IMG/VR virus record: IMGVR_UViG_3300035181_000471
Span: 62,001-126,000 of that record
DNA: 64,000 bases
Strand: one strand, 5' to 3'
Made by a program: the position numbers and the translations under genes
In this document: piece by piece, positions 36-55,452 of the stretch
Layout of the letters: each line of letters opens with the position of its first letter
How positions within the stretch are numbered: the first letter of the stretch is position 1
The notes under the pieces: model-generated
Told to the model about the DNA's origin: nothing
Databases searched by the model: none
Seen by the model: the letters and a program-made list of their open reading frames with translations, nothing else

Positions 36-110
36 TGGTGGAGCTACGGGGAGTCGAACCCCGAACTTTTGGATGCCGTCCAAATGTGTTCCCGCTAGCA
101 CTATAGCCCC
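36..110 (-). tRNA. tRNA-Ala(GGC)
   Basis: GGGGCTA/TAGCTCC acceptor with G3:U70, anticodon arm TTTGG-ACGGCAT-CCAAA, GTTCGACTC T-loop, encoded CCA. Confidence 0.93.
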
Positions 111-117
111 ATGATGC

Positions 118-191
118 TGGCTCCAAAAAGGGGAATCGAACCCCTGTCTCTGACTTAACAGGTCAGCATCCTACCATTGGATGATTTTGGA
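118..191 (-). tRNA. tRNA-Asn(GTT)
   Basis: Anticodon arm CTGAC-CTGTTAA-GTCAG, GTTCGATTC, G73, encoded CCA. Confidence 0.93.
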
Positions 192-270
192 ATAGTAAGG
201 TCTCTCCCTTGTCAAGCCTGGATGATTAGCGGCTTTCCCTCCGAGGTTGGGTTGGACAGTGAATCGTTTT

Positions 271-981
271 TTAGATTGCCTTCACTATCTCATTCGCCTG
301 ATTTTTACAAACCCAGGTGTCCAACTTTTTAAGGACTAATTGTCCATGATCAAATTCCCAATGACAGTTGGGGCAAAGACCAACCAGATTATCGGGGGCA
401 TTGATTTCTTTCAGTGTAGCGGAATCTGGGAAACTCATTACTGCTTGAATATGGCAGACCTCCACATGCTTACTATACCCACAATTAAAACAAGAATCGG
501 TCTTGTGGCAAACACTAGCTATTCTTTGAGCGTGTTTTGTTATAACAGACCTAGCTCTCTGCCAATTAGTGCCACCGGATTCAGATTTCCCAAATAACTC
601 TAACTTTGTTACATGGTCTCTTTTCCCTTTTAGGGGGTCTTTCTCTGCTTTAATCTTAACTACTTTTTCCTTTTTAGGTCTAAGTTTGTTATTGTAAGAG
701 GCCGCGCAAGAGGTGGAACAGAAAATCCCGCTTTTAGTCTGAGATGGGACTCTGTGAAACTGCTTGGAACAGTTAAAACAAGAGACCTCTAATCGAGTTA
801 TGTTATGATCGTGAAAGCATCGTTGGGAGCAGAATAATTTGATTTGCCCTCGTCTTTTCGATATAATTAAGTTGGCCTTAGATTGAGTGGTCTCTTTCCC
901 ACACTGCTCACAAACTACAGGAATGCGATCTTTGTATTTCTTGTCCTTATATTCGATCAGCAGCGTTTCTAGTTGAGTCAT
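271..981 (-). CDS. HNH homing-endonuclease-like protein with N-terminal CxxC...FCSxxC zinc-binding repeats, inserted in the tRNA array
   Basis: CFNCG...EVCHI...NLVGLCPNCHWEFD HNH signature; ATG at 981 preceded by GGAG (ORF track starts at TTG 1002); AT-rich. Confidence 0.85.
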   Translation of the reverse strand: MTQLETLLIEYKDKKYKDRIPVVCEQCGKETTQSKANLIISKRRGQIKLFCSQRCFHDHNITRLEVSCFNCSKQFHRVPSQTKSGIFCSTSCAASYNNKLRPKKEKVVKIKAEKDPLKGKRDHVTKLELFGKSESGGTNWQRARSVITKHAQRIASVCHKTDSCFNCGYSKHVEVCHIQAVMSFPDSATLKEINAPDNLVGLCPNCHWEFDHGQLVLKKLDTWVCKNQANEIVKAI

Positions 982-1020
982 AATTTCTCCCTCTATAATC
1001 AAGAGTTAGAAAGTCGATTT

Positions 1021-1095
1021 TGGTTGCGGGAGGTGGAATCGAACCACGCTTTCACTATGAGCTTATGAGACTCTAGGCCAACCTCTGGCCCCGCT
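1021..1095 (-). tRNA. tRNA-Met(CAT), initiator-like acceptor, atypical D-arm
   Basis: AGCGGGG/TCCCGCA-A-CCA with 1:72 mismatch, loop CTCATAA, GTTCGATTC; shortened D-arm. Confidence 0.75.
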
Positions 1096-1105
1096 ATAAT
1101 TTTAT

Positions 1106-1180
1106 TGGTCCTCCAGGCAGGAATTGAACCCGCACTTCATGGTTCGAAGCCATGTGTTCTATCCGTTATACTACTGGAAG
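1106..1180 (-). tRNA. tRNA-Arg(TCG)
   Basis: Anticodon arm CATGG-CTTCGAA-CCATG, GTTCAATTC, encoded CCA. Confidence 0.92.
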
Positions 1181-1308
1181 ATAATTTCTCGGCCTTGGGG
1201 TTGTGGCCCCTCGCTTGCGTCTGACTCCCTGCCATCAGTCAGAACCGTGTATAGAGCCGCTAAGTCTTCCTACCTACTCCATACGGAGAGGGGCTCTCTT
1301 GTGCGGCA

Positions 1309-1396
1309 TGGCGGAAGATACAGGAATCGAACCTGCTTGCCTTTGACAGCCCATGCTTTCCAGGCATGTGTGACGCTCCTACTTCACCGATCTTCC
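1309..1396 (-). tRNA. tRNA-Ser(GGA)
   Basis: CATGC-CTGGAAA-GCATG, long variable arm, G73, CCA. Confidence 0.93.
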
Positions 1397-1525
1397 ATTC
1401 TATACTAGATACTGAAAGTTTTTCAATATCGTTTGGTGGTAATTTTAGAATTATTTTTTGTAAACAACTCAGACCTTTGCTCTTATTATCGGGCGGTCCG
1501 GCGAGAACCAATCTTCGTCTTTATG

Positions 1526-1603
1526 TGGCGAGGCATAGGGGATTCGAACCCCTGATCTCTTCGTAGACAGCGAAGCGGGAACTCCGGACTTCCCCAATAC
1601 CCC
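1526..1603 (-). tRNA. tRNA-Asp(GTC)
   Basis: CTTCG-CTGTCTA-CGAAG, GTTCGAATC, G73, CCA. Confidence 0.92.
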
Positions 1604-1611
1604 ATGATAAT

Positions 1612-1686
1612 TGGTGCCAACAAAGGGATTCGAACCCTTGACAAGAAGCTTATGAGACTTCCCCCTCACCTTTCGGGCTTGCTGGC
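1612..1686 (-). tRNA. tRNA with CAT anticodon (elongator Met or lysidine-modified Ile2)
   Basis: GCCAGCA/TGTTGGC-A-CCA, GAAGT-CTCATAA-GCTTC, GTTCGAATC. Confidence 0.88.
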
Positions 1687-1745
1687 AAAGTGAGAGTTTT
1701 TAACTACCCAGTGGCTCTCACACTGGTCCTGGCCGTCCAAGTCAT

Positions 1746-1832
1746 TGGTACTCCTGACAGGATTCGAACCTGCGTTGGGCTTTCGCCGCACGGTTTCGTA
1801 GACCGTTACTAATCCATCTCAGTTACAGGAGC
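1746..1832 (-). tRNA. tRNA-Arg(ACG) with a long variable arm
   Basis: ACGGT-CTACGAA-ACCGT, extra arm GGC-GAAA-GCC, GTTCGAATC, CCA; 87 nt. Confidence 0.88.
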
Positions 1833-1840
1833 ATAGAATC

Positions 1841-1898
1841 AAGACTCGTCTTTTAGTTTCATCTTAAGTGAAAGGTTTTTAGTTGCTGTGAGAGTCTT
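1841..1898 (-). ncRNA. Candidate small RNA presenting an isolated anticodon-like stem-loop (CT-TAA-GA)
   Basis: Outer stem AAGACTC/GAGTCTT encloses TTTCA-CTTAAGA-TGAAA; lies between tRNA-Tyr CCA and tRNA-Arg 5' end. Confidence 0.45.
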
Positions 1899-1992
1899 TG
1901 GTGACGCATGTAGGAATCGAACCTACTCAGGGCTTACTTGTGTGCCAACGGTTTTACAGACCGCCTCCGCTCTCCTACTCGGACGATGCGCC
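1899..1992 (-). tRNA. tRNA-Tyr(GTA)
   Basis: GCGGT-CTGTAAA-ACCGT, long variable arm, A73, CCA. Confidence 0.93.
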
Positions 1993-2117
1993 ATAGACGA
2001 GGGTTTTTAGGTTCTCCCTCAAACCAATTCACCTGTCAACCCTAAAGTTGTAGATGGTTATCATGTTATTCATTATTTAGTTGTCAGAGAAGAAGAAACA
2101 AGCCTTGACTTGTTCTA

Positions 2118-2191
2118 TGGATGGGGTAGATGGATTTGAACCATCACCTTCGGAGTCAGAGACCGAAATCCTACCGTTAGAAGATACCCCA
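2118..2191 (-). tRNA. tRNA-Gln(CTG)
   Basis: TGGGGTA/TACCCCA acceptor (U1:A72), loop CTCTGAC, GTTCAAATC, CCA. Confidence 0.92.
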
Positions 2192-2387: not shown

Positions 2388-2505
2388 TGAAGGTGGTCCT
2401 CGTTTACATTTTGAGCGTTTTGCTCTCTTACCTACTACTGAAAATTTCGTAAACTTCTTTTACTTTACTTTTCTATCGGGTTTGGTTTCGCTTACCCAAC
2501 ACTAC

Positions 2506-41633: not shown

Positions 41634-42479
41634 TCACTTTTCACCATCTAAAAGTGAATCCAAATCTGGAATACCGAAGTCTGACTTTTCAAAGGTCATG
41701 GATGTGGCGTTGTTAGGATCATACATACTTTCTAGGATGAAAGTAATTAAACTATCCTCATACTCCATGATTTTCGGGTCAAATAAAAAGGGATCAACTC
41801 CCATAAATCCTAAGGCCCTAAATCCTTGGTAACCTTGAGACAATTCAATCCCTCTCTCCTCTTCGGCTTTGGCCTTTAGAAGATCGTCAAGGAAAGTATC
41901 TGCGGCGGCAACATTGGGGACCGTGAAAGCCTTGCCAATCTTCTTACCATTACCGATGGCATAAGTCAACCACTCGGGTTCAACCTCAAGAGTGTGCTTC
42001 TTTACATAGGATAGTGTGTCAGAAATCAGGATTGATACCTGATCAGACGGAGACAACTCAAGGTCTGAGTTAAGTGAAGGGCCATTACTTCTTAGCTTAG
42101 ATAGCTCTGTTAATAGTGCATATCTATCGTGGTAACTTGGGGTCTGATTGAGTGGAAGGAAGTCGGCTTCAGCGGTATACTGCTCGTTCTTCTCAGCCTC
42201 GGTCCCGAACATCAGAATAAAATCTCGCCTCAGATTAGCAGTTGTCATGTCCAGAGTTGCGGTGTCAAACGATTGCCCAGTTGAGAAGAATTCTCGTATG
42301 GACTCCAAGATCCTCTTTCGAAAACGCCAAGAGCAATTCATCAAGGCTTTTCTAAATATGTGGTCATTACACTTGGAGAATGCGGCACCTCTAAAATGAT
42401 AGAAGTTCTTTTTGCCTACTGTTCCAACTGGTTTAAGACCTGCATGTAGGGATAGATCCGACACTGTTAAATTCCTCAC
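41634..42479 (-). CDS. Hypothetical protein
   Basis: 281-aa ORF. Confidence 0.7.
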   Translation of the reverse strand: MRNLTVSDLSLHAGLKPVGTVGKKNFYHFRGAAFSKCNDHIFRKALMNCSWRFRKRILESIREFFSTGQSFDTATLDMTTANLRRDFILMFGTEAEKNEQYTAEADFLPLNQTPSYHDRYALLTELSKLRSNGPSLNSDLELSPSDQVSILISDTLSYVKKHTLEVEPEWLTYAIGNGKKIGKAFTVPNVAAADTFLDDLLKAKAEEERGIELSQGYQGFRALGFMGVDPFLFDPKIMEYEDSLITFILESMYDPNNATSMTFEKSDFGIPDLDSLLDGEK

Positions 42480-45178
42480 TCCTTCCCTAATACTTCATTC
42501 CACAGATTTTTGACAGCTTCAATGACGGTTGAAGTCTGAAGTTGAGCCATACAGCCATGTTTGGGGAAGTCATAGGTCTGACCGGGAGGATTGTCGCAGG
42601 GTCCAAGAGGGTGGATGGTCATGCGAGGATCTTCCTTAAAGCAAGGTTGACAGGGTAAGCCCACGGATAGGTTCGTGTTCTGTTCATAGCCTGCGGCTGA
42701 CGGCTGTGTGGAACCCCACAGGATGACGGCTGGGGTCTTAACCATGTTAGTCACATGGTTGGAGAAAGAGTCGATGCCTACATGGATTGTAGCGTTGGCA
42801 ATGAGCTTCACGGAATCCATTAAGGGGTTACCTAGGAAGCTGTGGACGGCTCCAGGAATCTTGGGGTCGTTCTCTGCACCAATCTGAATAAAAGTGATCT
42901 CAGGGCAAGCGGCTACTACCTCAGCCCAACGCTCTTGTGACCAATCCTTATAGTGAGACCAGCCAGCCTTGGTGTGAAGGGTTGCGTATTTCTTAGTGCT
43001 TGGGAGCGGGTACTTGGCTTCCAGTGAGTAGATCTTAGGTTCGATTCCCACTTCATCAGAGAAGTACTCTAGGAGGTGTCGCTTCATAGGTGTGTATGGG
43101 TAGTTCTCGTGAAGAGGGTATCCGACAAGGTTGATTGCCTTATCAAACTTAGAGGCATCAAATTCATTGAAGTCTCTAACCTCGTCTACTCCAGCGTCTT
43201 TCATAAGTTCAAACAAGGCAGAGCCGATGGAAGGGTGACAGAAGTAGGAGATCTTCTGTCCTGGATTTTGCTTTTTCAACTCGGGAATTAGGTTTAGGGT
43301 CATGATGATGTCCCCAATAGCGCCGGGACGATTTAAAGCTATGCCATTCAACTTCTTTACCACCTTAGACTTGAGATAGTCGAGGTGCTGGTCCCAACTG
43401 GCGTCCTCTACTCCGATGGCTTCCTTAGCCTGCTCCGCGCAATTGATGGCGTCTTGGGTTTTCCCAAGGTTATCGTAGCAGAAAGTCATGATTCGGAGAG
43501 GCTGATCAGTGTATTTATTCATTTCCCTCCAAAGTTGTGTTGGAGCGGGTTTGTTATTTTTTGCCATCAAACATGCGGAAATGCACTTCTCCCACTCGCC
43601 TGAATCGGAGAAGATGTAAGCTAGTTCCATCCAGAATTCAGACCAATCGGGTTGATGACTGATGGCTTCATAGAGGGTGGCGGTAGCTCCAGCTACATCA
43701 CGATTTGCTCTCTGGCATCTAGCTTTGTAGAGATAGGAAAACAGCCACTCATCGTAGAAAAAATGGCCCATCTTGATGCGCTCAGTGTAATATTGAACAG
43801 CTTCGGGCCATCTACCAGCGTCCTTATGGGTGTTAGCTAGATAGAATGCGGTTCTTGAGTTGGGATTCTCCTCCCATTCTTTTTCAAGAATGCGAAGGTT
43901 TCTCTGGTTGGAAGACTCACCTGGATTTGGTGCGCCATCGTGATGAATTATACAATCGCTGATGACGAAAGTGTGACTGTCCCCAAGAACGGGATACTCA
44001 TGAATAGCACCTTCAAAATGAATGCCCTTACGAGTTTTCCACATGCGATGATGAACCCATTTGACATCAGTCTCCATCATTACTCCGAAGGCATCATACT
44101 CATTTAAGTATAAAGCTCTCTTGAGATTCTGGGGAGTCTTGAGAATGTCATCAGCGTCCATCCAAAGAAGGTAGTCGGCATCAGGATAGGAGTCAATGAT
44201 GTTTACAAACTCGTTTCTGGCCTTGGCGAAGTCCCAGAGCTTCCAATCGCGCTTGGTGTCCAGCTTAGAGGCACCTAGATATTGAGTTACAAAAGCTCCT
44301 CTTTCCCTAGCTACCTGAACTGTCCTATCGGTTGAACCCGTGTCGATGATAACCACACCATCCGTCACATTTTTGATAGAGTCAAGGCACTTTGGAAGGT
44401 CTCTCTCTTCATTCTTGACAATCATTCCGGTGTAGAGCTTTGGCTTCTTCTTCAAGGGTTTCAGAACTATATCACCCTGACCAGCACCATCCATAGGACC
44501 ATACCACTCAATTGTGAACTGATCTTGAGCCTGAACTAGCAACTCAAGAATACTAGAGAAGGAATGGAAGAATGGATGGATGGTGAAGTGGCCTGAGGTT
44601 AGGTCTCTCTCAAAGCCGCTGACATTGTGCTGAGGCAATCTGAGGAACAGAATACCATCATCGGTCAGAAGCTTCTTTAACTTCTTGAGAGTCTCTAAGG
44701 GGTTATACATATGCTCAAAACAATGAATCATTGTGATGAGATCAAACTTATTTGTCTTCGTCCAATCCGTTATGGTTTCCTCTGAAATTTGCTCAAAGTC
44801 GGCCATTAACATTGGGACATCTAGCTCCTTTGAATACTCAGGAACTATCTCGATGTTATCCATGCCGTAGGCTTCACAACCTCTGTTTTTGAAGCAATGA
44901 GCTAGGTAGGGATACTTGGAACCAATGTCGAGTGTTTTGATGGGTTGATTGTTGAACCAGCGTTCCAGAATGCTTCCGGCAAGCCAATCGTTTACACCCT
45001 TTTCGTAATCTGACATAAGGTGTCCAGCGAAATCCCCATTGACTTTTTCGTGGTCAGCTTCATAAACCTTTTCGGTCATCGGCTGTTGATACCAGCAATC
45101 GCAGGAGGGACAAACCCAGTAAGGTGTGTCCTGAAACTTAGCGGTAGATTCTGTTCTACAAATGGGGCAAATACCCAT
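42476..45178 (-). CDS. Multidomain SAM methyltransferase / GT2 glycosyltransferase / TPR / GT9 glycosyltransferase
   Basis: CPIC..CPSC, LDIGS, HCFEH; MIVKNEE, DTGSTD, DFAKARN, MDADD; TPR helices; GAIGDII, KDWS, GIDSFSNH, LWGST. Confidence 0.85.
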   Translation of the reverse strand: MGICPICRTESTAKFQDTPYWVCPSCDCWYQQPMTEKVYEADHEKVNGDFAGHLMSDYEKGVNDWLAGSILERWFNNQPIKTLDIGSKYPYLAHCFKNRGCEAYGMDNIEIVPEYSKELDVPMLMADFEQISEETITDWTKTNKFDLITMIHCFEHMYNPLETLKKLKKLLTDDGILFLRLPQHNVSGFERDLTSGHFTIHPFFHSFSSILELLVQAQDQFTIEWYGPMDGAGQGDIVLKPLKKKPKLYTGMIVKNEERDLPKCLDSIKNVTDGVVIIDTGSTDRTVQVARERGAFVTQYLGASKLDTKRDWKLWDFAKARNEFVNIIDSYPDADYLLWMDADDILKTPQNLKRALYLNEYDAFGVMMETDVKWVHHRMWKTRKGIHFEGAIHEYPVLGDSHTFVISDCIIHHDGAPNPGESSNQRNLRILEKEWEENPNSRTAFYLANTHKDAGRWPEAVQYYTERIKMGHFFYDEWLFSYLYKARCQRANRDVAGATATLYEAISHQPDWSEFWMELAYIFSDSGEWEKCISACLMAKNNKPAPTQLWREMNKYTDQPLRIMTFCYDNLGKTQDAINCAEQAKEAIGVEDASWDQHLDYLKSKVVKKLNGIALNRPGAIGDIIMTLNLIPELKKQNPGQKISYFCHPSIGSALFELMKDAGVDEVRDFNEFDASKFDKAINLVGYPLHENYPYTPMKRHLLEYFSDEVGIEPKIYSLEAKYPLPSTKKYATLHTKAGWSHYKDWSQERWAEVVAACPEITFIQIGAENDPKIPGAVHSFLGNPLMDSVKLIANATIHVGIDSFSNHVTNMVKTPAVILWGSTQPSAAGYEQNTNLSVGLPCQPCFKEDPRMTIHPLGPCDNPPGQTYDFPKHGCMAQLQTSTVIEAVKNLWNEVLGKE

Positions 45179-45237: not shown

Positions 45238-45266
45238 ATTATACTATTACCCACTATTTTGTCCAA
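45238..45266 (-). promoter_or_regulatory. Sigma70-like promoter TTGGAC-N17-TATAAT
   Basis: Canonical spacing upstream of glycosyltransferase operon. Confidence 0.65.
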
Positions 45267-45471
45267 CCCCCGCATCCTGTGGTGCGTGACCCTCCATTTC
45301 AGAAGGGGAAGGCGGTTTCCTGTCTGAGATTCCCACTCAAACTTGGATACCCTGTGATCACACCCGCAAGGTTGCAGGCACTATCCATCGCAATCCAGGT
45401 GTAAAAATGGACCTGGAAGGCTTACATAGTCAGGGTCTATGTCGAAAGACAGAAGTCTTTTGCTGTACTTT
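45266..45471 (-). ncRNA. Candidate omegaRNA-like structured RNA overlapping the 3' end of the TnpB-like gene
   Basis: At least six consecutive hairpins; ends AGGAAACCGCCTTCC...GGAGGGTCAC, resembling IS200/IS605 right ends. Confidence 0.45.
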
Positions 45472-46836
45472 TTCTTTACGGCGATCCAACCTTTTTCGGA
45501 CTGTGCGACAGGTTCCACGATCCATGAATGTAGCACCGTGCCACATATCATATTTCGCCAAAGCCAGTTGGAGAGCATAGTTAGCCATAGTTTCCGGCAA
45601 AACCTTGGTCCCAGTATGGGAAATCAGGCCGTTACAGGTATACTTGACTAGAACTTGCGCTCCAGTTAATCCCATGATTGTAGCAAACTCCTCGTTTTCA
45701 GCTAGTAGTTTACGCTCCCACACTTTTAGGTGCTTGGAATCGTAGAACGGCGTATCTTTCGGATATTGCTCCCCAAGTGAGACAAGTCTTGGAGTTAAGT
45801 AGAATTCTATAGCACCCACCGCCTTTAGAACTCCACATCTGCGAGTGAATTCTTTATGAATCCCCAGGAGATTTTTAGGTGTAACGCTAGATCCGTCTAG
45901 ACTTAGGGATCTGACCTTACCCTTGATTTCTTTGAAGAACTTGTCAAGGAAGTTCTTCACATTTTCTAATAATGCAGGACTTATAGTGTAAAACTCTCGA
46001 TCTTCGAAGGCGTTTTGAACAACGATGCTCAAGCCTTTCTCAGAGAACGAGCAACCGATGTCAACAAGTCTTGGATCTCGGCAAAAATTGATGGAACTAT
46101 CTTCTAAGTTCACTTCCCTCACTACATCGGGAGCTGTGAAGGTGAATGATACCAAGAATCGCTTGTCAGATTTCCTAACCAAGCGAGTTGAGACCACTCG
46201 CCTGAGATCTGAGCCTACTGACTTGAGGTAGAGGGCAACTTCAGATTGAATACCTGGGTAGTTTCTCAAATCCAACGGTACGGTGTTCAGACGGTGGAGC
46301 CTCTTATGCCTCAGGGGGCTTGAAGAGCGACCTCTGCGCTTCAGATACTCTTTCAAGGCTCTGAGCGTGTAGAAGGGGCTTTCTGCGAAGGCACGGGCTA
46401 GGTTAGAGTCGGTCTTCAGGAGACCGCGACCTAACTGGATACCCTTTTGGTCCAGGTCCACGAGTAGGTTCCAAGCCTTCAAGTAGTCTTGGAACATGGC
46501 TTCCATGCCGATTATGTCCTTCAAGCCAATAGACTTACGGTGGCGGATTTTCTTGATAGAAAACTCTTCTTTGCAGAACTCAGAGGAAAATGCTATCTTA
46601 TCCCCTTCGATGGAATAGTCCGTGTGCTTACGCTCACAAGGAGCAATGCCTTTCAGGAGGCCGGAGCCCCCGGAGGTGGCACCACGGGACCAAACAGAGC
46701 CATCCCACCACTCGGCATCCATCATCACGGACTTGTATCGGCGGAACTCCCCCTTCTGGAAGAAAGGCATAGGCTCGGGGAAGACCCTAGGTAGGTCACT
46801 CGTAGCCTTGATAGTCTTCACGGTGAAGGTGGTCAT
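45430..46836 (-). CDS. Highly diverged TnpB/Cas12f-like protein, RuvC motifs degenerate, about 90-aa N-terminal extension
   Basis: Colinear weak matches to TnpB blocks (see findings); GAGGA RBS. Confidence 0.5.
   Translation of the reverse strand: MTTFTVKTIKATSDLPRVFPEPMPFFQKGEFRRYKSVMMDAEWWDGSVWSRGATSGGSGLLKGIAPCERKHTDYSIEGDKIAFSSEFCKEEFSIKKIRHRKSIGLKDIIGMEAMFQDYLKAWNLLVDLDQKGIQLGRGLLKTDSNLARAFAESPFYTLRALKEYLKRRGRSSSPLRHKRLHRLNTVPLDLRNYPGIQSEVALYLKSVGSDLRRVVSTRLVRKSDKRFLVSFTFTAPDVVREVNLEDSSINFCRDPRLVDIGCSFSEKGLSIVVQNAFEDREFYTISPALLENVKNFLDKFFKEIKGKVRSLSLDGSSVTPKNLLGIHKEFTRRCGVLKAVGAIEFYLTPRLVSLGEQYPKDTPFYDSKHLKVWERKLLAENEEFATIMGLTGAQVLVKYTCNGLISHTGTKVLPETMANYALQLALAKYDMWHGATFMDRGTCRTVRKRLDRRKEKVQQKTSVFRHRP
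45445..45471. repeat. 27-bp direct repeat, copy 1
   Basis: AAAGACAGAAGTCTTTTGCTGTACTTT identical to 46975-47001. Confidence 0.92.
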
Positions 46837-46974
46837 CCAGAAATAGTCCTCAAAGGTTTGTTACTCTATTCTGGGGAATCGGAAGCGGATTTCTTTTTCC
46901 TGGTTTCATAGGGGGTCTGAAAACCATAAAGAGAAGAAAAGATATTATACATATATATGTCTTTTTTAAGTACA

Positions 46975-47001
46975 AAAGACAGAAGTCTTTTGCTGTACTT
47001 T
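46975..47001. repeat. 27-bp direct repeat, copy 2, abutting a TATAAT (47002-47007, minus strand)
   Basis: Identical to 45445-45471; part of hairpin AAGTACA-AAAGAC-AGAA-GTCTTT-TGC-TGTACTT. Confidence 0.92.
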
Positions 47002-47196
47002 ATTATAGGAAACGAGGCCCCTATACACTTCGAATGGACCCTAAGTTGTTGAAAACATTAGCCTGTCAACTTTCGAACACCCCTCAAAATGGTCCAAAAC
47101 CTGAAAAAACTCTAATTTTCCGGTGTGAGTTTGTTTTCCTTGAGTTGTAAGCGAATTTCGTCAGATGGGTTTCAGTGCCCTAGATAGGAGAGGGAG

Positions 47197-54480: not shown

Positions 54481-55452
54481 ATGTCAGATATTCTATTCCC
54501 AACAGATTATGACCTAACCACCGCGCAAAGAGTGGGGCTACTTCCCATTCGTGGGGAAAAGAGAATCATTCCCGTTGATGTTGGAGTGACAGGGGAGGAT
54601 GATGAAACGGCCATTAGTGCCATTTCCAATGTAAAGGCCACCCTAACCGACTATGTGACCGTCAGACTCCTAAACAGAAAAGGTGAAAACTATGTCTACC
54701 GTTTCCTAGTCAACCCTAAAACTATTTCAGTCGCTCACCAGACCTTAGACTCACATTCCATGACCAGAGCCGGGTGGCAGTTTGGGGTATGGGGGGAGGA
54801 CACCATCGACCTCCACATCTCTGGCTCCACCGCAGGGCAATACCACTTCAACGGAACCACTGACGCATTTGAAGAATTCAGTATTAGTTATAGAAACATC
54901 ATGGAGTTAATGAATCTTTTTGAAAACAATGGCTATACCTTTGAAGGAGATGATCTTAACTCAACGAATGTATTTGCCGCCGACTTTACTAGACGAAGAA
55001 TTAAATATCACCAGGATGTTGAATTAAAAGTTGGAAACTTCATCTGGAGAGGGATGTTCACTACTATGAGTCTCTCTAGCACAGCCGACACCCCCTACTA
55101 CAACAAGTTTGATCTCGGTTTTCTAGCTTGGAAGGAAGACTATAAGAAGGAATCTCCTTGGAGAAGTCCCATCGTAAATAGTGTCTACAGAGGCCACTCC
55201 AAAGAAGTTCTTGATATGCTAGAAGCAAAAGCACAGCAAGAGGCGGAATACGCTGCTGATGCCGCCGCCAAAGAAGAATCTGCAAAGCAGTCAGATGCCG
55301 CCATTCAAAACGAGATTCTAACTCAAGGTATTCAACAAGGTATCGTGGACCCAAGAACCGCCTTTGGTCAAACATCCTACAACAATCAAACCCCTCTCAT
55401 CGCAGACGCATTAGTTCGTATGCAGTTATTTGGGTCAGAAGGAAACTTATAA
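54481..55452 (+). CDS. Baseplate/tube-initiator-like protein (paralogous to C-terminal domain of preceding gene)
   Basis: FLVNP, TRAGW..WGE..ISGSTAG, WRGMF..S..ADTPY. Confidence 0.65.
   Translation: MSDILFPTDYDLTTAQRVGLLPIRGEKRIIPVDVGVTGEDDETAISAISNVKATLTDYVTVRLLNRKGENYVYRFLVNPKTISVAHQTLDSHSMTRAGWQFGVWGEDTIDLHISGSTAGQYHFNGTTDAFEEFSISYRNIMELMNLFENNGYTFEGDDLNSTNVFAADFTRRRIKYHQDVELKVGNFIWRGMFTTMSLSSTADTPYYNKFDLGFLAWKEDYKKESPWRSPIVNSVYRGHSKEVLDMLEAKAQQEAEYAADAAAKEESAKQSDAAIQNEILTQGIQQGIVDPRTAFGQTSYNNQTPLIADALVRMQLFGSEGNL

What the first reader, a model, noticed from the sequence alone, without database searches (positions are those of the whole stretch)
45266..46836. Diverged, probably nuclease-dead TnpB-like protein with an omegaRNA-like RNA at the early/late junction
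Seen: the 468-aa ORF shows TnpB-like blocks in the correct order: KIRHRK...MEAMFQDYLKAWN (cf. KYRLYP...FG..RFVWN), ALKEYLKRRGRSSSPLRHKR (cf. AYKNFF..GFPKFK), VVSTRLVRKSDKRFLVSF (cf. IKSATI.R..GWYVSF), VDIGCSFS (RuvC-I GIDLG, degenerate), EFATIMGLTGAQVLVKYT (cf. YKA..G..V..VDP.YTS), ETMANYALQL (cf. RD.NAA.NI, Asp lost); no zinc ribbon, about 90 extra N-terminal residues, no TnpA nearby. Overlapping its 3' end is a 200-nt run of hairpins (AAAGAC/GTCTTT, ACATAG/CTATGT, TCCAGGT/ACCTGGA, GCCTGCAA/TTGCGGGT inside GGATA/TATCC, TGAG/CTCA, CCTTCC/GGAGGG) ending in GGAGGGTCAC at 45286. Established: TnpB omegaRNAs overlap the gene 3' end and finish at TCAA/TCAC right ends, with the guide immediately after; nuclease-dead derivatives (TldR) act as RNA-guided regulators. 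Inference: a domesticated RNA-guided DNA-binding regulator of a lytic jumbo phage, predicted guide GCACCACAGGATGCGGGGGT (45285-45266), with a possible effector in the N-terminal extension.
Basis: partly seen in the sequence, partly recalled or inferred. Interest (0 to 1): 0.85.

Follow-up and report, generated by a model that had tools for sequence, protein, structure and literature searches.

The report
Self-targeting RNA-guided TnpB-like phage regulator
A core gene of a group of giant freshwater phages encodes a very diverged, probably non-cutting relative of the TnpB/Cas12 RNA-guided enzymes, and its built-in guide RNA appears to be aimed at the gene's own promoter, which would make it a natural RNA-guided self-regulating switch.

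Summary
The 468-aa ORF (45430-46836, minus strand) is real. By fold it belongs to the TnpB/Cas12 superfamily: Foldseek gives Cas12k and giant-virus TnpB-type 'transposases', and TnpB itself for a zinc-ribbon-bearing relative. No sequence profile detects this (Pfam, PHROGs, PDB, hhalign). The third RuvC carboxylate and the zinc-ribbon cysteines are missing, and about 93 residues are added at the N-terminus.

The proposed TCAC boundary and 20-nt guide are not supported.

The family-wide RNA signal lies further upstream. A roughly 95-nt scaffold sits inside the ORF's 3' end, with frozen synonymous sites and a hairpin that covaries within coding sequence. A 27-nt segment (45471-45445) follows it directly and is repeated exactly at 47001-46975, abutting the TATAAT of the gene's own promoter.

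The two copies co-vary in 8 genomes. Four further diverged clades keep the same arrangement with unrelated sequences, and where the scaffold can be aligned the repeat starts at the same position.

Best reading: a TldR-like RNA-guided DNA binder hard-wired to its own promoter at the head of the leftward operon. I score it a new variant of a known kind, of high interest. Binding, RNA ends and nuclease inactivity are all untested.

The parts
45430..46836 (-). 468-aa TnpB/Cas12-fold protein. Residues 1-93 are a clade-specific N-terminal extension. Then come a WED strand (94-104), REC helices (111-168), WED strands (185-239), RuvC strands 1-3 (258-285, D259), strand 4 (308-313, D314), a degenerate zinc ribbon (385-406) and the last RuvC helix (414-428), with M417 where the third Asp is expected.
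   Evidence: ORF. 12 close and 18 remote homologues. AF2 model with pLDDT 78 and its secondary structure. Foldseek PDB top hit Cas12k 7n3o_A, prob 0.96. Foldseek BFVD: 12 hits with E<=1e-3, best 1e-6, giant-virus 'transposases'. Relative P0026 gives TnpB 8h1j_A as top hit. The domain and catalytic-residue assignment is my inference from strand order and alignment A2.
45472..45565 (-). Proposed guide-RNA scaffold embedded in the last ~31 codons. It holds the long hairpin SL1 (45562-45513), a short helix (about 45503-45487) and an invariant single-stranded 3' end (...GGATCGCCGTAAAGAA).
   Evidence: The identical-codon fraction rises from ~0.4 to 0.75-0.87 from residue ~430 onwards. SL1 has 20 pairs, 6 with changes on both sides, 93% paired, and 0 of 500 shuffles reach it. 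Covariance model R1 finds the same element at the gene 3' end of the distant loci L027 (E 2.7e-7) and L139 (5.5e-5).
45445..45471 (-). Proposed guide: the downstream copy of the 27-nt repeat (AAAGTACAGCAAAAGACTTCTGTCTTT). It starts exactly where scaffold conservation ends. It is translated incidentally as the non-conserved C-terminal tail.
   Evidence: Identity with the upstream copy starts at alignment column 97 in 7 genomes, 96 in L139 and 92 in L008. For L027 I estimate about 98, because the script reported 108 for the stretch after its single mismatch. The ORF stops before, inside or after the repeat in different relatives.
46975..47001 (-). Proposed DNA target: the upstream copy of the 27-nt repeat, at the start of the gene's transcribed leader.
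   Evidence: It is 100% identical to the downstream copy, and these are the only two copies in the window and in the 221-kb contig. The copies co-vary in 8 genomes.
47002..47007 (-). TATAAT directly 5' of the target. It is a candidate -10 box of the gene's promoter and a candidate TAM-like flank. The self copy has AAAGAA at this place.
   Evidence: The flank YCTATAAT is invariant in all window-clade genomes, while the self flank is GTAAAGAA. Promoter and TAM roles are inferred.
46937..46965 (-). Leader hairpin after the target: purine-rich arm, AT-rich loop, pyrimidine-rich arm. The pattern is conserved after the target in every clade.
   Evidence: Alignment A9 and folds of ten leaders. Its role is unknown.
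45286..45444 (-). It holds several hairpins with compensatory changes. It is clade-specific and of unknown role; it may be a 3' end or stability module of the precursor.
   Evidence: It is absent in L008 and different in L004 and in L023-25.
45266..45285 (-). Not supported.
   Evidence: It is absent in L009 and identical in window, L010 and L011. There is no second match.
45238..45265 (-). Sigma-70-type promoter (TGGACA-16-TATAAT) of the downstream methyltransferase/glycosyltransferase gene.
   Evidence: 11 of 12 consensus matches. It is conserved in window, L010 and L009.

Best explanation
The ORF encodes a TnpB/Cas12-fold RNA-guided DNA-binding protein that has probably lost DNA cleavage. 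Its guide RNA is made from the 3' end of its own transcript. About 95 nt inside the last codons form the protein-binding scaffold, and the next 27 nt (45471-45445), or their first part, act as the guide. The guide is identical to the non-template strand at 47001-46975, directly downstream of the TATAAT of the gene's own promoter. The complex is therefore predicted to pair with the template strand there, using the TATAAT-side flank as a TAM-like signal that the self copy lacks, and to block RNA polymerase. This promoter sits at the divergent junction and heads the leftward gene array, so the result would be RNA-guided negative feedback, a pulse or shut-off of that transcription unit. Shown: the fold, the conserved scaffold, the co-varying repeat pair and its fixed position. 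Inferred: the RNA ends, DNA binding, the TAM, repression and nuclease inactivity.
For: Fold. Remote zinc-ribbon relatives are linked by HMMER at E 8.5e-9 to 5e-5 against 1.8 billion proteins and aligned. Scaffold: synonymous freeze, SL1 covariation inside coding sequence, and the CM hits in distant clades. Guide and target: a perfect 27-nt pair, the only copies in the genome. Both copies change together in 8 genomes across roughly 10 variable positions, with one internal mismatch, in L025. The same layout, one copy at the gene's 3' end and one upstream of the gene, recurs with unrelated sequences: L027/L028 (20 nt, 1 mismatch), L139 (18 nt), L013 (26 nt) and L014-16 (23 nt, 1 mismatch). The repeat starts at the same scaffold position. 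The upstream copy abuts or overlaps a -10-like box in the phage clades. The size matches known TldR guide RNAs, a ~97-nt scaffold plus a 16-nt guide (10.1101/2023.11.30.569447). The gene has been inherited vertically in conserved synteny, so the matching copies have been maintained rather than recently created.
Against: No RNA ends, binding or repression data exist. In the window clade the guide contains a 6-bp hairpin, which is unusual for a guide. The single mismatches between copies fall at guide positions 10 (L027) and 12 (L014), inside what would be a TnpB seed. The candidate TAM differs between clades. D259 and D314 are conserved, so residual catalysis is not excluded. The TldR authors warn that single-residue RuvC changes often mislead. 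The covarying 160-nt trailer after the guide is unexplained. A regulator whose only visible target is itself needs a further rationale. Fold-search E-values against solved structures are marginal (2e-3 and 8e-4), and no sequence method links the family to TnpB.
Confidence: 0.55

Rival explanations
1. One reading: the scaffold is the hairpin run 45470-45286, ending in TCAC, and the guide is 45285-45266, aimed at an unknown phage or host site.
For: The hairpin run is real and covaries. Its 3' part (GGGTATCC...CCGCCTTCCC) is invariant among four genomes with 64-83% protein identity. The 20-mer is identical in three of them.
Against: The run is not family-wide: it is absent in L008 and different in L004 and L023-25. 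The 20-mer and TCAC are deleted in L009. There is no conservation boundary at TCAC. The 20-mer overlaps the next promoter's -35. No target was found in the window or the 221-kb contig. This model does not explain the co-varying repeat pair.
Confidence: 0.1
2. The two repeat copies are RNA-level sites, not guide and target. The protein binds this segment within its guide-RNA scaffold, and the identical segment at the 5' end of its mRNA acts as a mimic for translational or stability autoregulation, or as a shared processing site.
For: The upstream copy probably lies in the transcribed leader, just after the -10. In the window clade it forms a hairpin. A conserved leader hairpin follows it in all clades.
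Against: The repeat sequence is unrelated between clades and has no hairpin in L027, L139 or L013. A protein-recognised motif should be conserved along with the protein. Full identity over 18-30 nt, loop and flanks included, is more than protein recognition needs.
Confidence: 0.15
3. The repeats are DNA scars or sites of a mobile cassette (target duplication, att-like sites, or RNA-guided homing next to the matching site as in CRISPR-associated transposons), kept identical by gene conversion.
For: The geometry X-[leader-ORF-scaffold]-X is what integration of a circle at X would give. Cas12k is the best solved-structure match. A serine recombinase gene lies near the copy in L014.
Against: The gene sits in the same synteny in all the phage clades down to about 28% identity. 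No empty site or second location was seen. No transposase or Tn7-like genes are nearby. Repeat length varies from 18 to 30 nt. Old scars would have drifted apart, yet the copies co-vary.
Confidence: 0.08
4. The complex binds the upstream site as in the best explanation, but the purpose is not repression. The R-loop next to the AT-rich leader marks a site for another DNA transaction, such as replication initiation, packaging, or recruitment through the N-terminal extension.
For: An AT-rich tract flanked by purine and pyrimidine runs follows the target in every clade. The phage clades add a conserved 93-residue N-terminal extension. The site lies at the divergent junction of the genome.
Against: There is no direct evidence. 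The composition profile shows no clear skew switch at this point. The extension matches nothing known.
Confidence: 0.1

Closest known systems
TldR (TnpB-like nuclease-dead repressors; fliC- and oppF-associated; Wiegand et al., 10.1101/2023.11.30.569447; Xiao et al., 10.64898/2026.09.22.753285)
   Same: TnpB fold with a degraded RuvC/zinc-finger end. Immobile, with no TnpA. The guide RNA is encoded at and after the gene's 3' end, with a ~95-nt scaffold followed by the guide. The predicted target is at a promoter. Some TldRs are phage-encoded.
   Different: TnpB sequence profiles do not detect this family. The target is its own promoter rather than a host gene. It is a syntenic core gene of lytic-looking jumbo phages rather than prophage cargo. 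It carries a 93-residue N-terminal extension. Only one of the three RuvC carboxylates is lost in the phage clades.
TnpB with omegaRNA of IS200/IS605 elements (ISDra2; PDB 8h1j, 8exa)
   Same: Domain order is WED-REC-WED-RuvC-Zn ribbon-RuvC. The RNA scaffold overlaps the ORF 3' end and the guide follows immediately. A flank-dependent (TAM) self/non-self logic is plausible.
   Different: No TnpA, no LE/RE hairpin pair in most clades, single copy, fixed location. The guide matches a site upstream of the same gene, which a cutting enzyme could not tolerate.
Cas12k of type V-K CRISPR-associated transposons (PDB 7n3o, 7pla)
   Same: It is the best solved-structure match. It is naturally nuclease-dead. 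CAST elements carry a guide that matches a site just outside the element.
   Different: No CRISPR array, tracrRNA or TnsB/TnsC/TniQ genes here, and no sign of mobility.
Cas9 autoregulation by the long-form tracrRNA (10.1101/2020.05.21.102756)
   Same: An RNA-guided effector directed to its own promoter for negative feedback.
   Different: That is a side function of an active nuclease using a truncated guide. Here self-targeting appears to be the only hard-wired guide of a dead TnpB-like protein.
dCas12f-sigmaE RNA-guided transcription (PMC13472631)
   Same: An exapted miniature Cas12/TnpB-like protein acting on transcription through a partner.
   Different: That system activates through an ECF sigma factor. 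No sigma partner was identified here, and the target geometry (on or next to the -10) suggests repression.

Membership tests
TnpB/Cas12 superfamily (fold level) | WED - REC - WED - RuvC (RNase H fold) - zinc ribbon/TNB - final RuvC helix, in that order, in one chain | tested here: met
   AF2 model, pLDDT 78. Foldseek PDB top hit Cas12k over 472 columns, prob 0.96, E 2e-3. BFVD: 12 hits with E<=1e-3, best 1e-6, prob 1.0, over 400-530 columns, to TnpB-type viral 'transposases'. Relative P0026: TnpB 8h1j_A E 8.4e-4, then Cas12f and Cas12k. The domain order is read from DSSP and alignment A2.
TnpB (Pfam OrfB_IS605 / OrfB_Zn_ribbon) | Significant match to the curated sequence profiles | tested here: not met
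   No hit even at E<=10 for the query or for 24 family members. hhalign against E. coli InsQ gave probability 0.1. PDB profile searches were empty.
TnpB (active nuclease) | Intact RuvC D-E-D triad | tested here: inconclusive
   D259 (strand 1) and D314 (end of strand 4) are conserved. The position two residues before the invariant N419 is M, R or L in all members. Residue mapping is by topology, not superposition. Activity is not testable here.
TnpB / TldR | Zinc ribbon (CxxC..CxxC) between RuvC-II and RuvC-III | tested here: not met
   The cysteines are absent in the phage clades. They are present in remote relatives P0024, P0026, P0027 and P0029 at the aligned segment.
TnpB / TldR guide RNA | Conserved structured RNA overlapping the ORF 3' end, with a sharp scaffold/guide junction | tested here: met
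   Synonymous freeze. SL1 covariation. CM hits in distant clades. The junction lies at column 96-98. No Rfam family matches.
TldR | Guide complementary to a promoter-proximal DNA target next to a TAM, causing repression | tested here: inconclusive
   A co-varying match to the gene's own promoter region was found in five clades. Flank differences between target and self copies are consistent with a TAM. Binding and repression are not testable with these tools.
IS200/IS605 or IS607 transposon | TnpA gene, LE/RE ends, multiple or variable genomic locations | tested here: not met
   Neighbours have no transposase domains. Single copy per genome. Conserved synteny.
Type V CRISPR-Cas / CAST (Cas12k) | CRISPR array and, for CAST, TnsB/TnsC/TniQ | tested here: not met
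   No tandem or spaced repeats at 40-52 kb. Neighbouring ORFs have no such domains.

The most novel reading that the evidence does not exclude
A deep, sequence-orphan branch of the TnpB/Cas12 superfamily whose members, in giant phages and in other elements, all carry a single hard-wired guide aimed at their own upstream region. In the phages, the R-loop made at this fixed site next to an AT-rich leader would not merely feed back on the gene. It would serve as a landmark for a genome-level process, such as the early-to-late switch at the divergent junction, replication initiation or packaging, executed through the conserved N-terminal extension.
Probability: 0.12. Interest if true: 0.95.

Novelty: new variant of a known kind. 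Interest (0 to 1): 0.8.

Why it matters
RNA-guided transcription factors derived from TnpB (TldRs) are a recent discovery, and the described clades act on host genes. This locus points to a separate branch that profile searches cannot see. It is fixed as a syntenic core gene in giant lytic-type phages, and its guide seems to be kept matched to its own promoter over long evolutionary distances.

If confirmed, it would be a natural, minimal, self-contained RNA-guided feedback circuit of protein, guide and target within 1.6 kb. It would also extend the known sequence space of compact RNA-guided DNA binders, and it would give a handle on how jumbo phages time their divergent gene blocks.

The co-varying guide and target pairs across clades also give a ready-made comparative data set for TAM and seed rules.

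Tried and rejected
- Pfam, PHROGs and Rfam scans of the ORF and region found nothing meaningful. BLAST of the DNA and protein against GenBank phages found no match. PDB sequence searches with profiles A1 and A2 gave only noise.
- hhalign of the family profile against E. coli InsQ gave no signal. The homologue search seeded with InsQ returned only near-identical E. coli proteins, so no diverse TnpB profile could be built. That search was wasted.
- A degenerate DNA pattern for the upstream site in IMG/VR returned about 110 chance hits, also wasted. A scan of bacterial and archaeal genomes for the zinc-ribbon clade found nothing.
- The RNAalifold long-range pairings between the ORF spacer and the trailer (CCTGTC:GACAGG and TTGGAT:ATCCAA) are invariant in clade 1 and have no counterpart in clade 2. 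I do not rely on them.
- I considered the repeat as an intrinsic terminator or operator palindrome. I rejected this as the general explanation because other clades keep the repeat without any dyad symmetry.
- I considered the repeat as LE/RE hairpins of an IS200/IS605 element and rejected it for the same reason, and because there is no TnpA and no mobility.
- I considered the downstream copy as an internal promoter. Its -10-like hexamers (TAAAGA, TGTAAA) lack the final T, so this is unlikely but not excluded.
- Partial matches of the guide elsewhere in the window (2456-2471 and 55228-55243) have no TATAAT flank and look like chance.
- The N-terminal 95 residues were searched alone against PDB and gave noise.
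Full report
**1. What is at the coordinates**

The minus strand carries an ATG-started 468-aa ORF at 45430-46836. It lies at a divergent junction. To its right, genes run on the plus strand from 47197. One of them resembles an internal virion protein with an endolysin domain. To its left a long minus-strand array follows, including a methyltransferase/glycosyltransferase fusion, ribonucleotide reductase and a dUTPase fusion.

The window belongs to a 221-kb IMG/VR viral contig and carries eight tRNA genes. No match exists in GenBank phages at the DNA or protein level.

**2. The protein**

Sequence profiles see nothing: Pfam, PHROGs, PDB sequences, and hhalign against E. coli InsQ. The large protein collections hold 12 close homologues with 32-83% identity. 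An exhaustive HMMER search adds remote relatives down to E about 5e-5.

Four of these, 400-455 aa long, carry a CxxC..CxxC zinc ribbon. It sits exactly where the query has GLTGAQVLVKY...G.KV.

An AlphaFold2 model built on 23 sequences has pLDDT 78 and pTM 0.60. Its strand and helix order reads as:
- a WED strand;
- a REC helical bundle;
- a WED hairpin;
- RuvC strands 1-3;
- a helix;
- strand 4;
- a helix;
- strand 5;
- a small beta unit;
- a final helix.

The fold searches support the TnpB/Cas12 assignment:
- Foldseek against PDB puts Cas12k-sgRNA first, over 472 columns with prob 0.96 and E 2e-3. LaTranC, Cas12n and other RuvC folds follow.
- Foldseek against BFVD gives 12 hits at E<=1e-3, best 1e-6, prob 1.0, over 400-530 columns. 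The named hits among them are mostly the TnpB-type 'transposases' of giant viruses and phages.
- An independent model of the zinc-ribbon relative P0026 (pLDDT 81) returns the TnpB-omegaRNA-DNA complex 8h1j_A as top hit (E 8.4e-4). Cas12f, Cas12k and dCas12f follow.

I conclude that the family is a sequence-orphan branch of the TnpB/Cas12 superfamily.

D259 (VDIG, strand 1) and D314 (end of strand 4) are conserved in the phage clades. The residue two positions before the invariant N419, where TnpB has its third Asp, is M, R or L in every member. Nuclease loss is therefore likely but not proven. The TldR authors note that single RuvC substitutions are an unreliable criterion.

Residues 1-93 are conserved and modelled with low confidence. 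They are absent from shorter relatives and match nothing known.

**3. The gene is not mobile**

In every phage relative the gene sits at the same divergent junction. This holds even for the ~36% and ~28% identity clades (L027 from a 313-kb contig, and L139). There, the divergent 167-aa neighbour and the ~280-aa downstream gene are recognisably homologous.

Neighbours have no transposase or Tn7-like domains, and there is no repeat array.

**4.

The 160 nt after the stop codon (45444-45286) fold significantly better than shuffles and keep helices through compensatory changes. RNAalifold gives -79.1 against -41.9 +/- 4.5. There are 13 compensatory pairs against a mean of 3.2 and a maximum of 10 in shuffles. 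Nine are fully kept, against 0-2 when partners are slid.

Two are replaced by a covarying long stem.

The element is clade-specific, however. L008 (39% identity) lacks it, and L004 and L023-25 have different versions.

The TCAC 'right end' is not a conservation boundary. The 20-nt 'guide' is identical in three genomes and deleted in L009, and it merges with the -35 of a strong sigma-70-like promoter for the next gene. It has no other match in the window or the whole contig.

**5. Where the family-wide RNA signal is**

Codon-aligned comparison shows that the fraction of identical codons at conserved residues is about 0.3-0.5 along the gene. It rises to 0.75-0.87 over the last ~35 codons, from about 45550-45565.

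Within this stretch a long hairpin, SL1 (45562-45513), is kept by compensatory substitutions that even change amino acids on both arms. It has 20 pairs, 6 of them with double changes, and is 93% paired. None of 500 shuffles reach it, and slid controls pair at 35-49%.

A covariance model of this region finds the same element at the 3' end of the gene in the distant loci L027 (E 2.7e-7) and L139 (5.5e-5). Part of that score reflects protein homology.

The nucleotide conservation ends abruptly at ...GTAAAGAA.

**6. The repeat**

Exactly at that junction begins a 27-nt segment (45471-45445). It recurs, 100% identical and in the same orientation, at 47001-46975, 1530 nt upstream. These are the only two copies in the 221-kb contig.

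In eight genomes of the window clade both copies are present. They differ between genomes in the 5' part, the loop, one stem base and the last base. Within each genome they are identical, apart from one internal mismatch in L025.

The upstream copy always follows YCTATAAT. The downstream (self) copy follows GTAAAGAA.

The ORF ends before, within or after the repeat in different relatives. The repeat is therefore not conserved as protein.

The same layout recurs with unrelated sequences in four further clades:

| Clade | Repeat | Notes |
|---|---|---|
| L027/L028 | 20 nt, 1 mismatch | upstream copy follows a TATAT(A) box |
| L139 | 18 nt | |
| L013 (zinc-ribbon clade) | 26 nt | |
| L014-16 | 23 nt, 1 mismatch | |

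The identity starts at the same scaffold alignment column: 97 in seven genomes, 96 in L139, and 92 in L008. For L027 I estimate about 98. I did not map the repeat start onto the scaffold alignment for the two zinc-ribbon clades.

Outside the window clade the repeat has no dyad symmetry. By my estimate, not computed, a chance exact repeat of 18 nt or more within 2.5 kb has a probability of order 1e-4 or less per locus. Five independent clades at the same position cannot be chance.

After the upstream copy, all clades share a leader with a purine-rich arm, an AT-rich loop and a pyrimidine-rich arm (TTCTTTTCTT-like). It folds as a hairpin.

**7. Interpretation**

A conserved ~95-nt scaffold overlapping the ORF end, followed by a variable segment, is the signature of TnpB and TldR guide RNAs. 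Mature TldR RNAs have a ~97-nt scaffold plus a 16-nt guide.

The variable segment here has a co-evolving twin at the gene's own promoter. The simplest reading is that it is the guide and the twin is its DNA target. The differing 5' flanks would provide self/non-self discrimination.

A cutting enzyme could not coexist with such a target next to its own gene. This agrees with the missing third RuvC residue, and with the loss of at least two RuvC carboxylates in the zinc-ribbon clade.

The predicted outcome is an R-loop on the template strand from +1 of the promoter, and repression. That is negative feedback on the first promoter of the leftward array, which would give a pulse of expression.

I put 0.55 on this whole chain. 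I put more, about 0.7, on the narrower claim that the 27-mer is the guide and the upstream copy its target.

**8. Rivals**

- The two copies as RNA-level protein or processing sites, with a leader mimic: 0.15. The lack of sequence conservation between clades counts against it.
- Mobile-cassette scars or homing sites: 0.08. Deep synteny and co-variation count against it.
- Binding as proposed, but for a non-transcriptional purpose: 0.1.

The covarying trailer, the leader hairpin and the N-terminal extension remain unexplained by any of them.

**9. Comparison with the known, and novelty**

The locus works like a TldR, with Cas9's tracrRNA-mediated self-repression as a functional analogue. It fails the sequence-profile membership test for TnpB and TldR, lacks the zinc ribbon, adds an N-terminal domain, and targets itself.

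Literature searches found no TnpB-like system of jumbo phages and no TnpB-family protein with a self-promoter guide.

I classify it as a new variant of a known kind, with interest 0.8.

Noticed in passing
L024:2247-2897, L025:2121-2828, and the P0008 contig: In some relatives a homing-type endonuclease gene (HNH, or Endonuclease_7) is inserted between the TnpB-like gene and the methyltransferase/glycosyltransferase gene. This intergenic spot seems to be an insertion hot spot.
   Followed up: no
window 47010-47196: The divergent intergenic region holds two blocks conserved across clades: CACACCGGAAAATTAGAGTTTTTTC and GGGTGTTCGAAAGTTGACAGGCTAATG..AACAACTTA (alignment A10). They are candidate phage-specific promoters or operators.
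   Followed up: partly
window 46937-46965 and the equivalent place in L004, L008, L013, L014, L027, L139: A leader hairpin directly after the upstream repeat copy (purine-rich arm, AT-rich loop, pyrimidine-rich arm) is conserved in pattern across all clades, even in GC-rich loci.
   Followed up: partly
window 42476-45178 (-): A 900-aa fusion protein with SAM-methyltransferase, GT2, TPR and GT9 (heptosyltransferase-like) domains. It is split into two genes in some relatives.
   Followed up: no
window 36-2191 (-): A cluster of eight tRNA genes: Ala, Asn, Arg x2, Ser, Asp, Tyr, Gln.
   Followed up: no
window 45297-45311 vs 46747-46761: The 5' arm of the last trailer hairpin is 87% complementary over 15 nt to codons 26-31 of the ORF. 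This could be chance or an antisense contact.
   Followed up: no
L013:830-1090: Many degenerate ~22-nt repeats (GGATCCCGAAGG-like) lie between the upstream repeat copy and the gene start of a zinc-ribbon-clade relative.
   Followed up: no
L027:4274-4294 vs 2951-2971: A second, weaker direct repeat (16 of 21) links the sequence right after the guide to the start-codon region of the same gene.
   Followed up: no
L014:5892-6644 (-): A serine recombinase (Resolvase domain) gene lies about 670 nt from the upstream repeat copy of a zinc-ribbon-clade relative, next to imuB/dnaE2-like genes. The context of the non-phage clade is unexplored.
   Followed up: no
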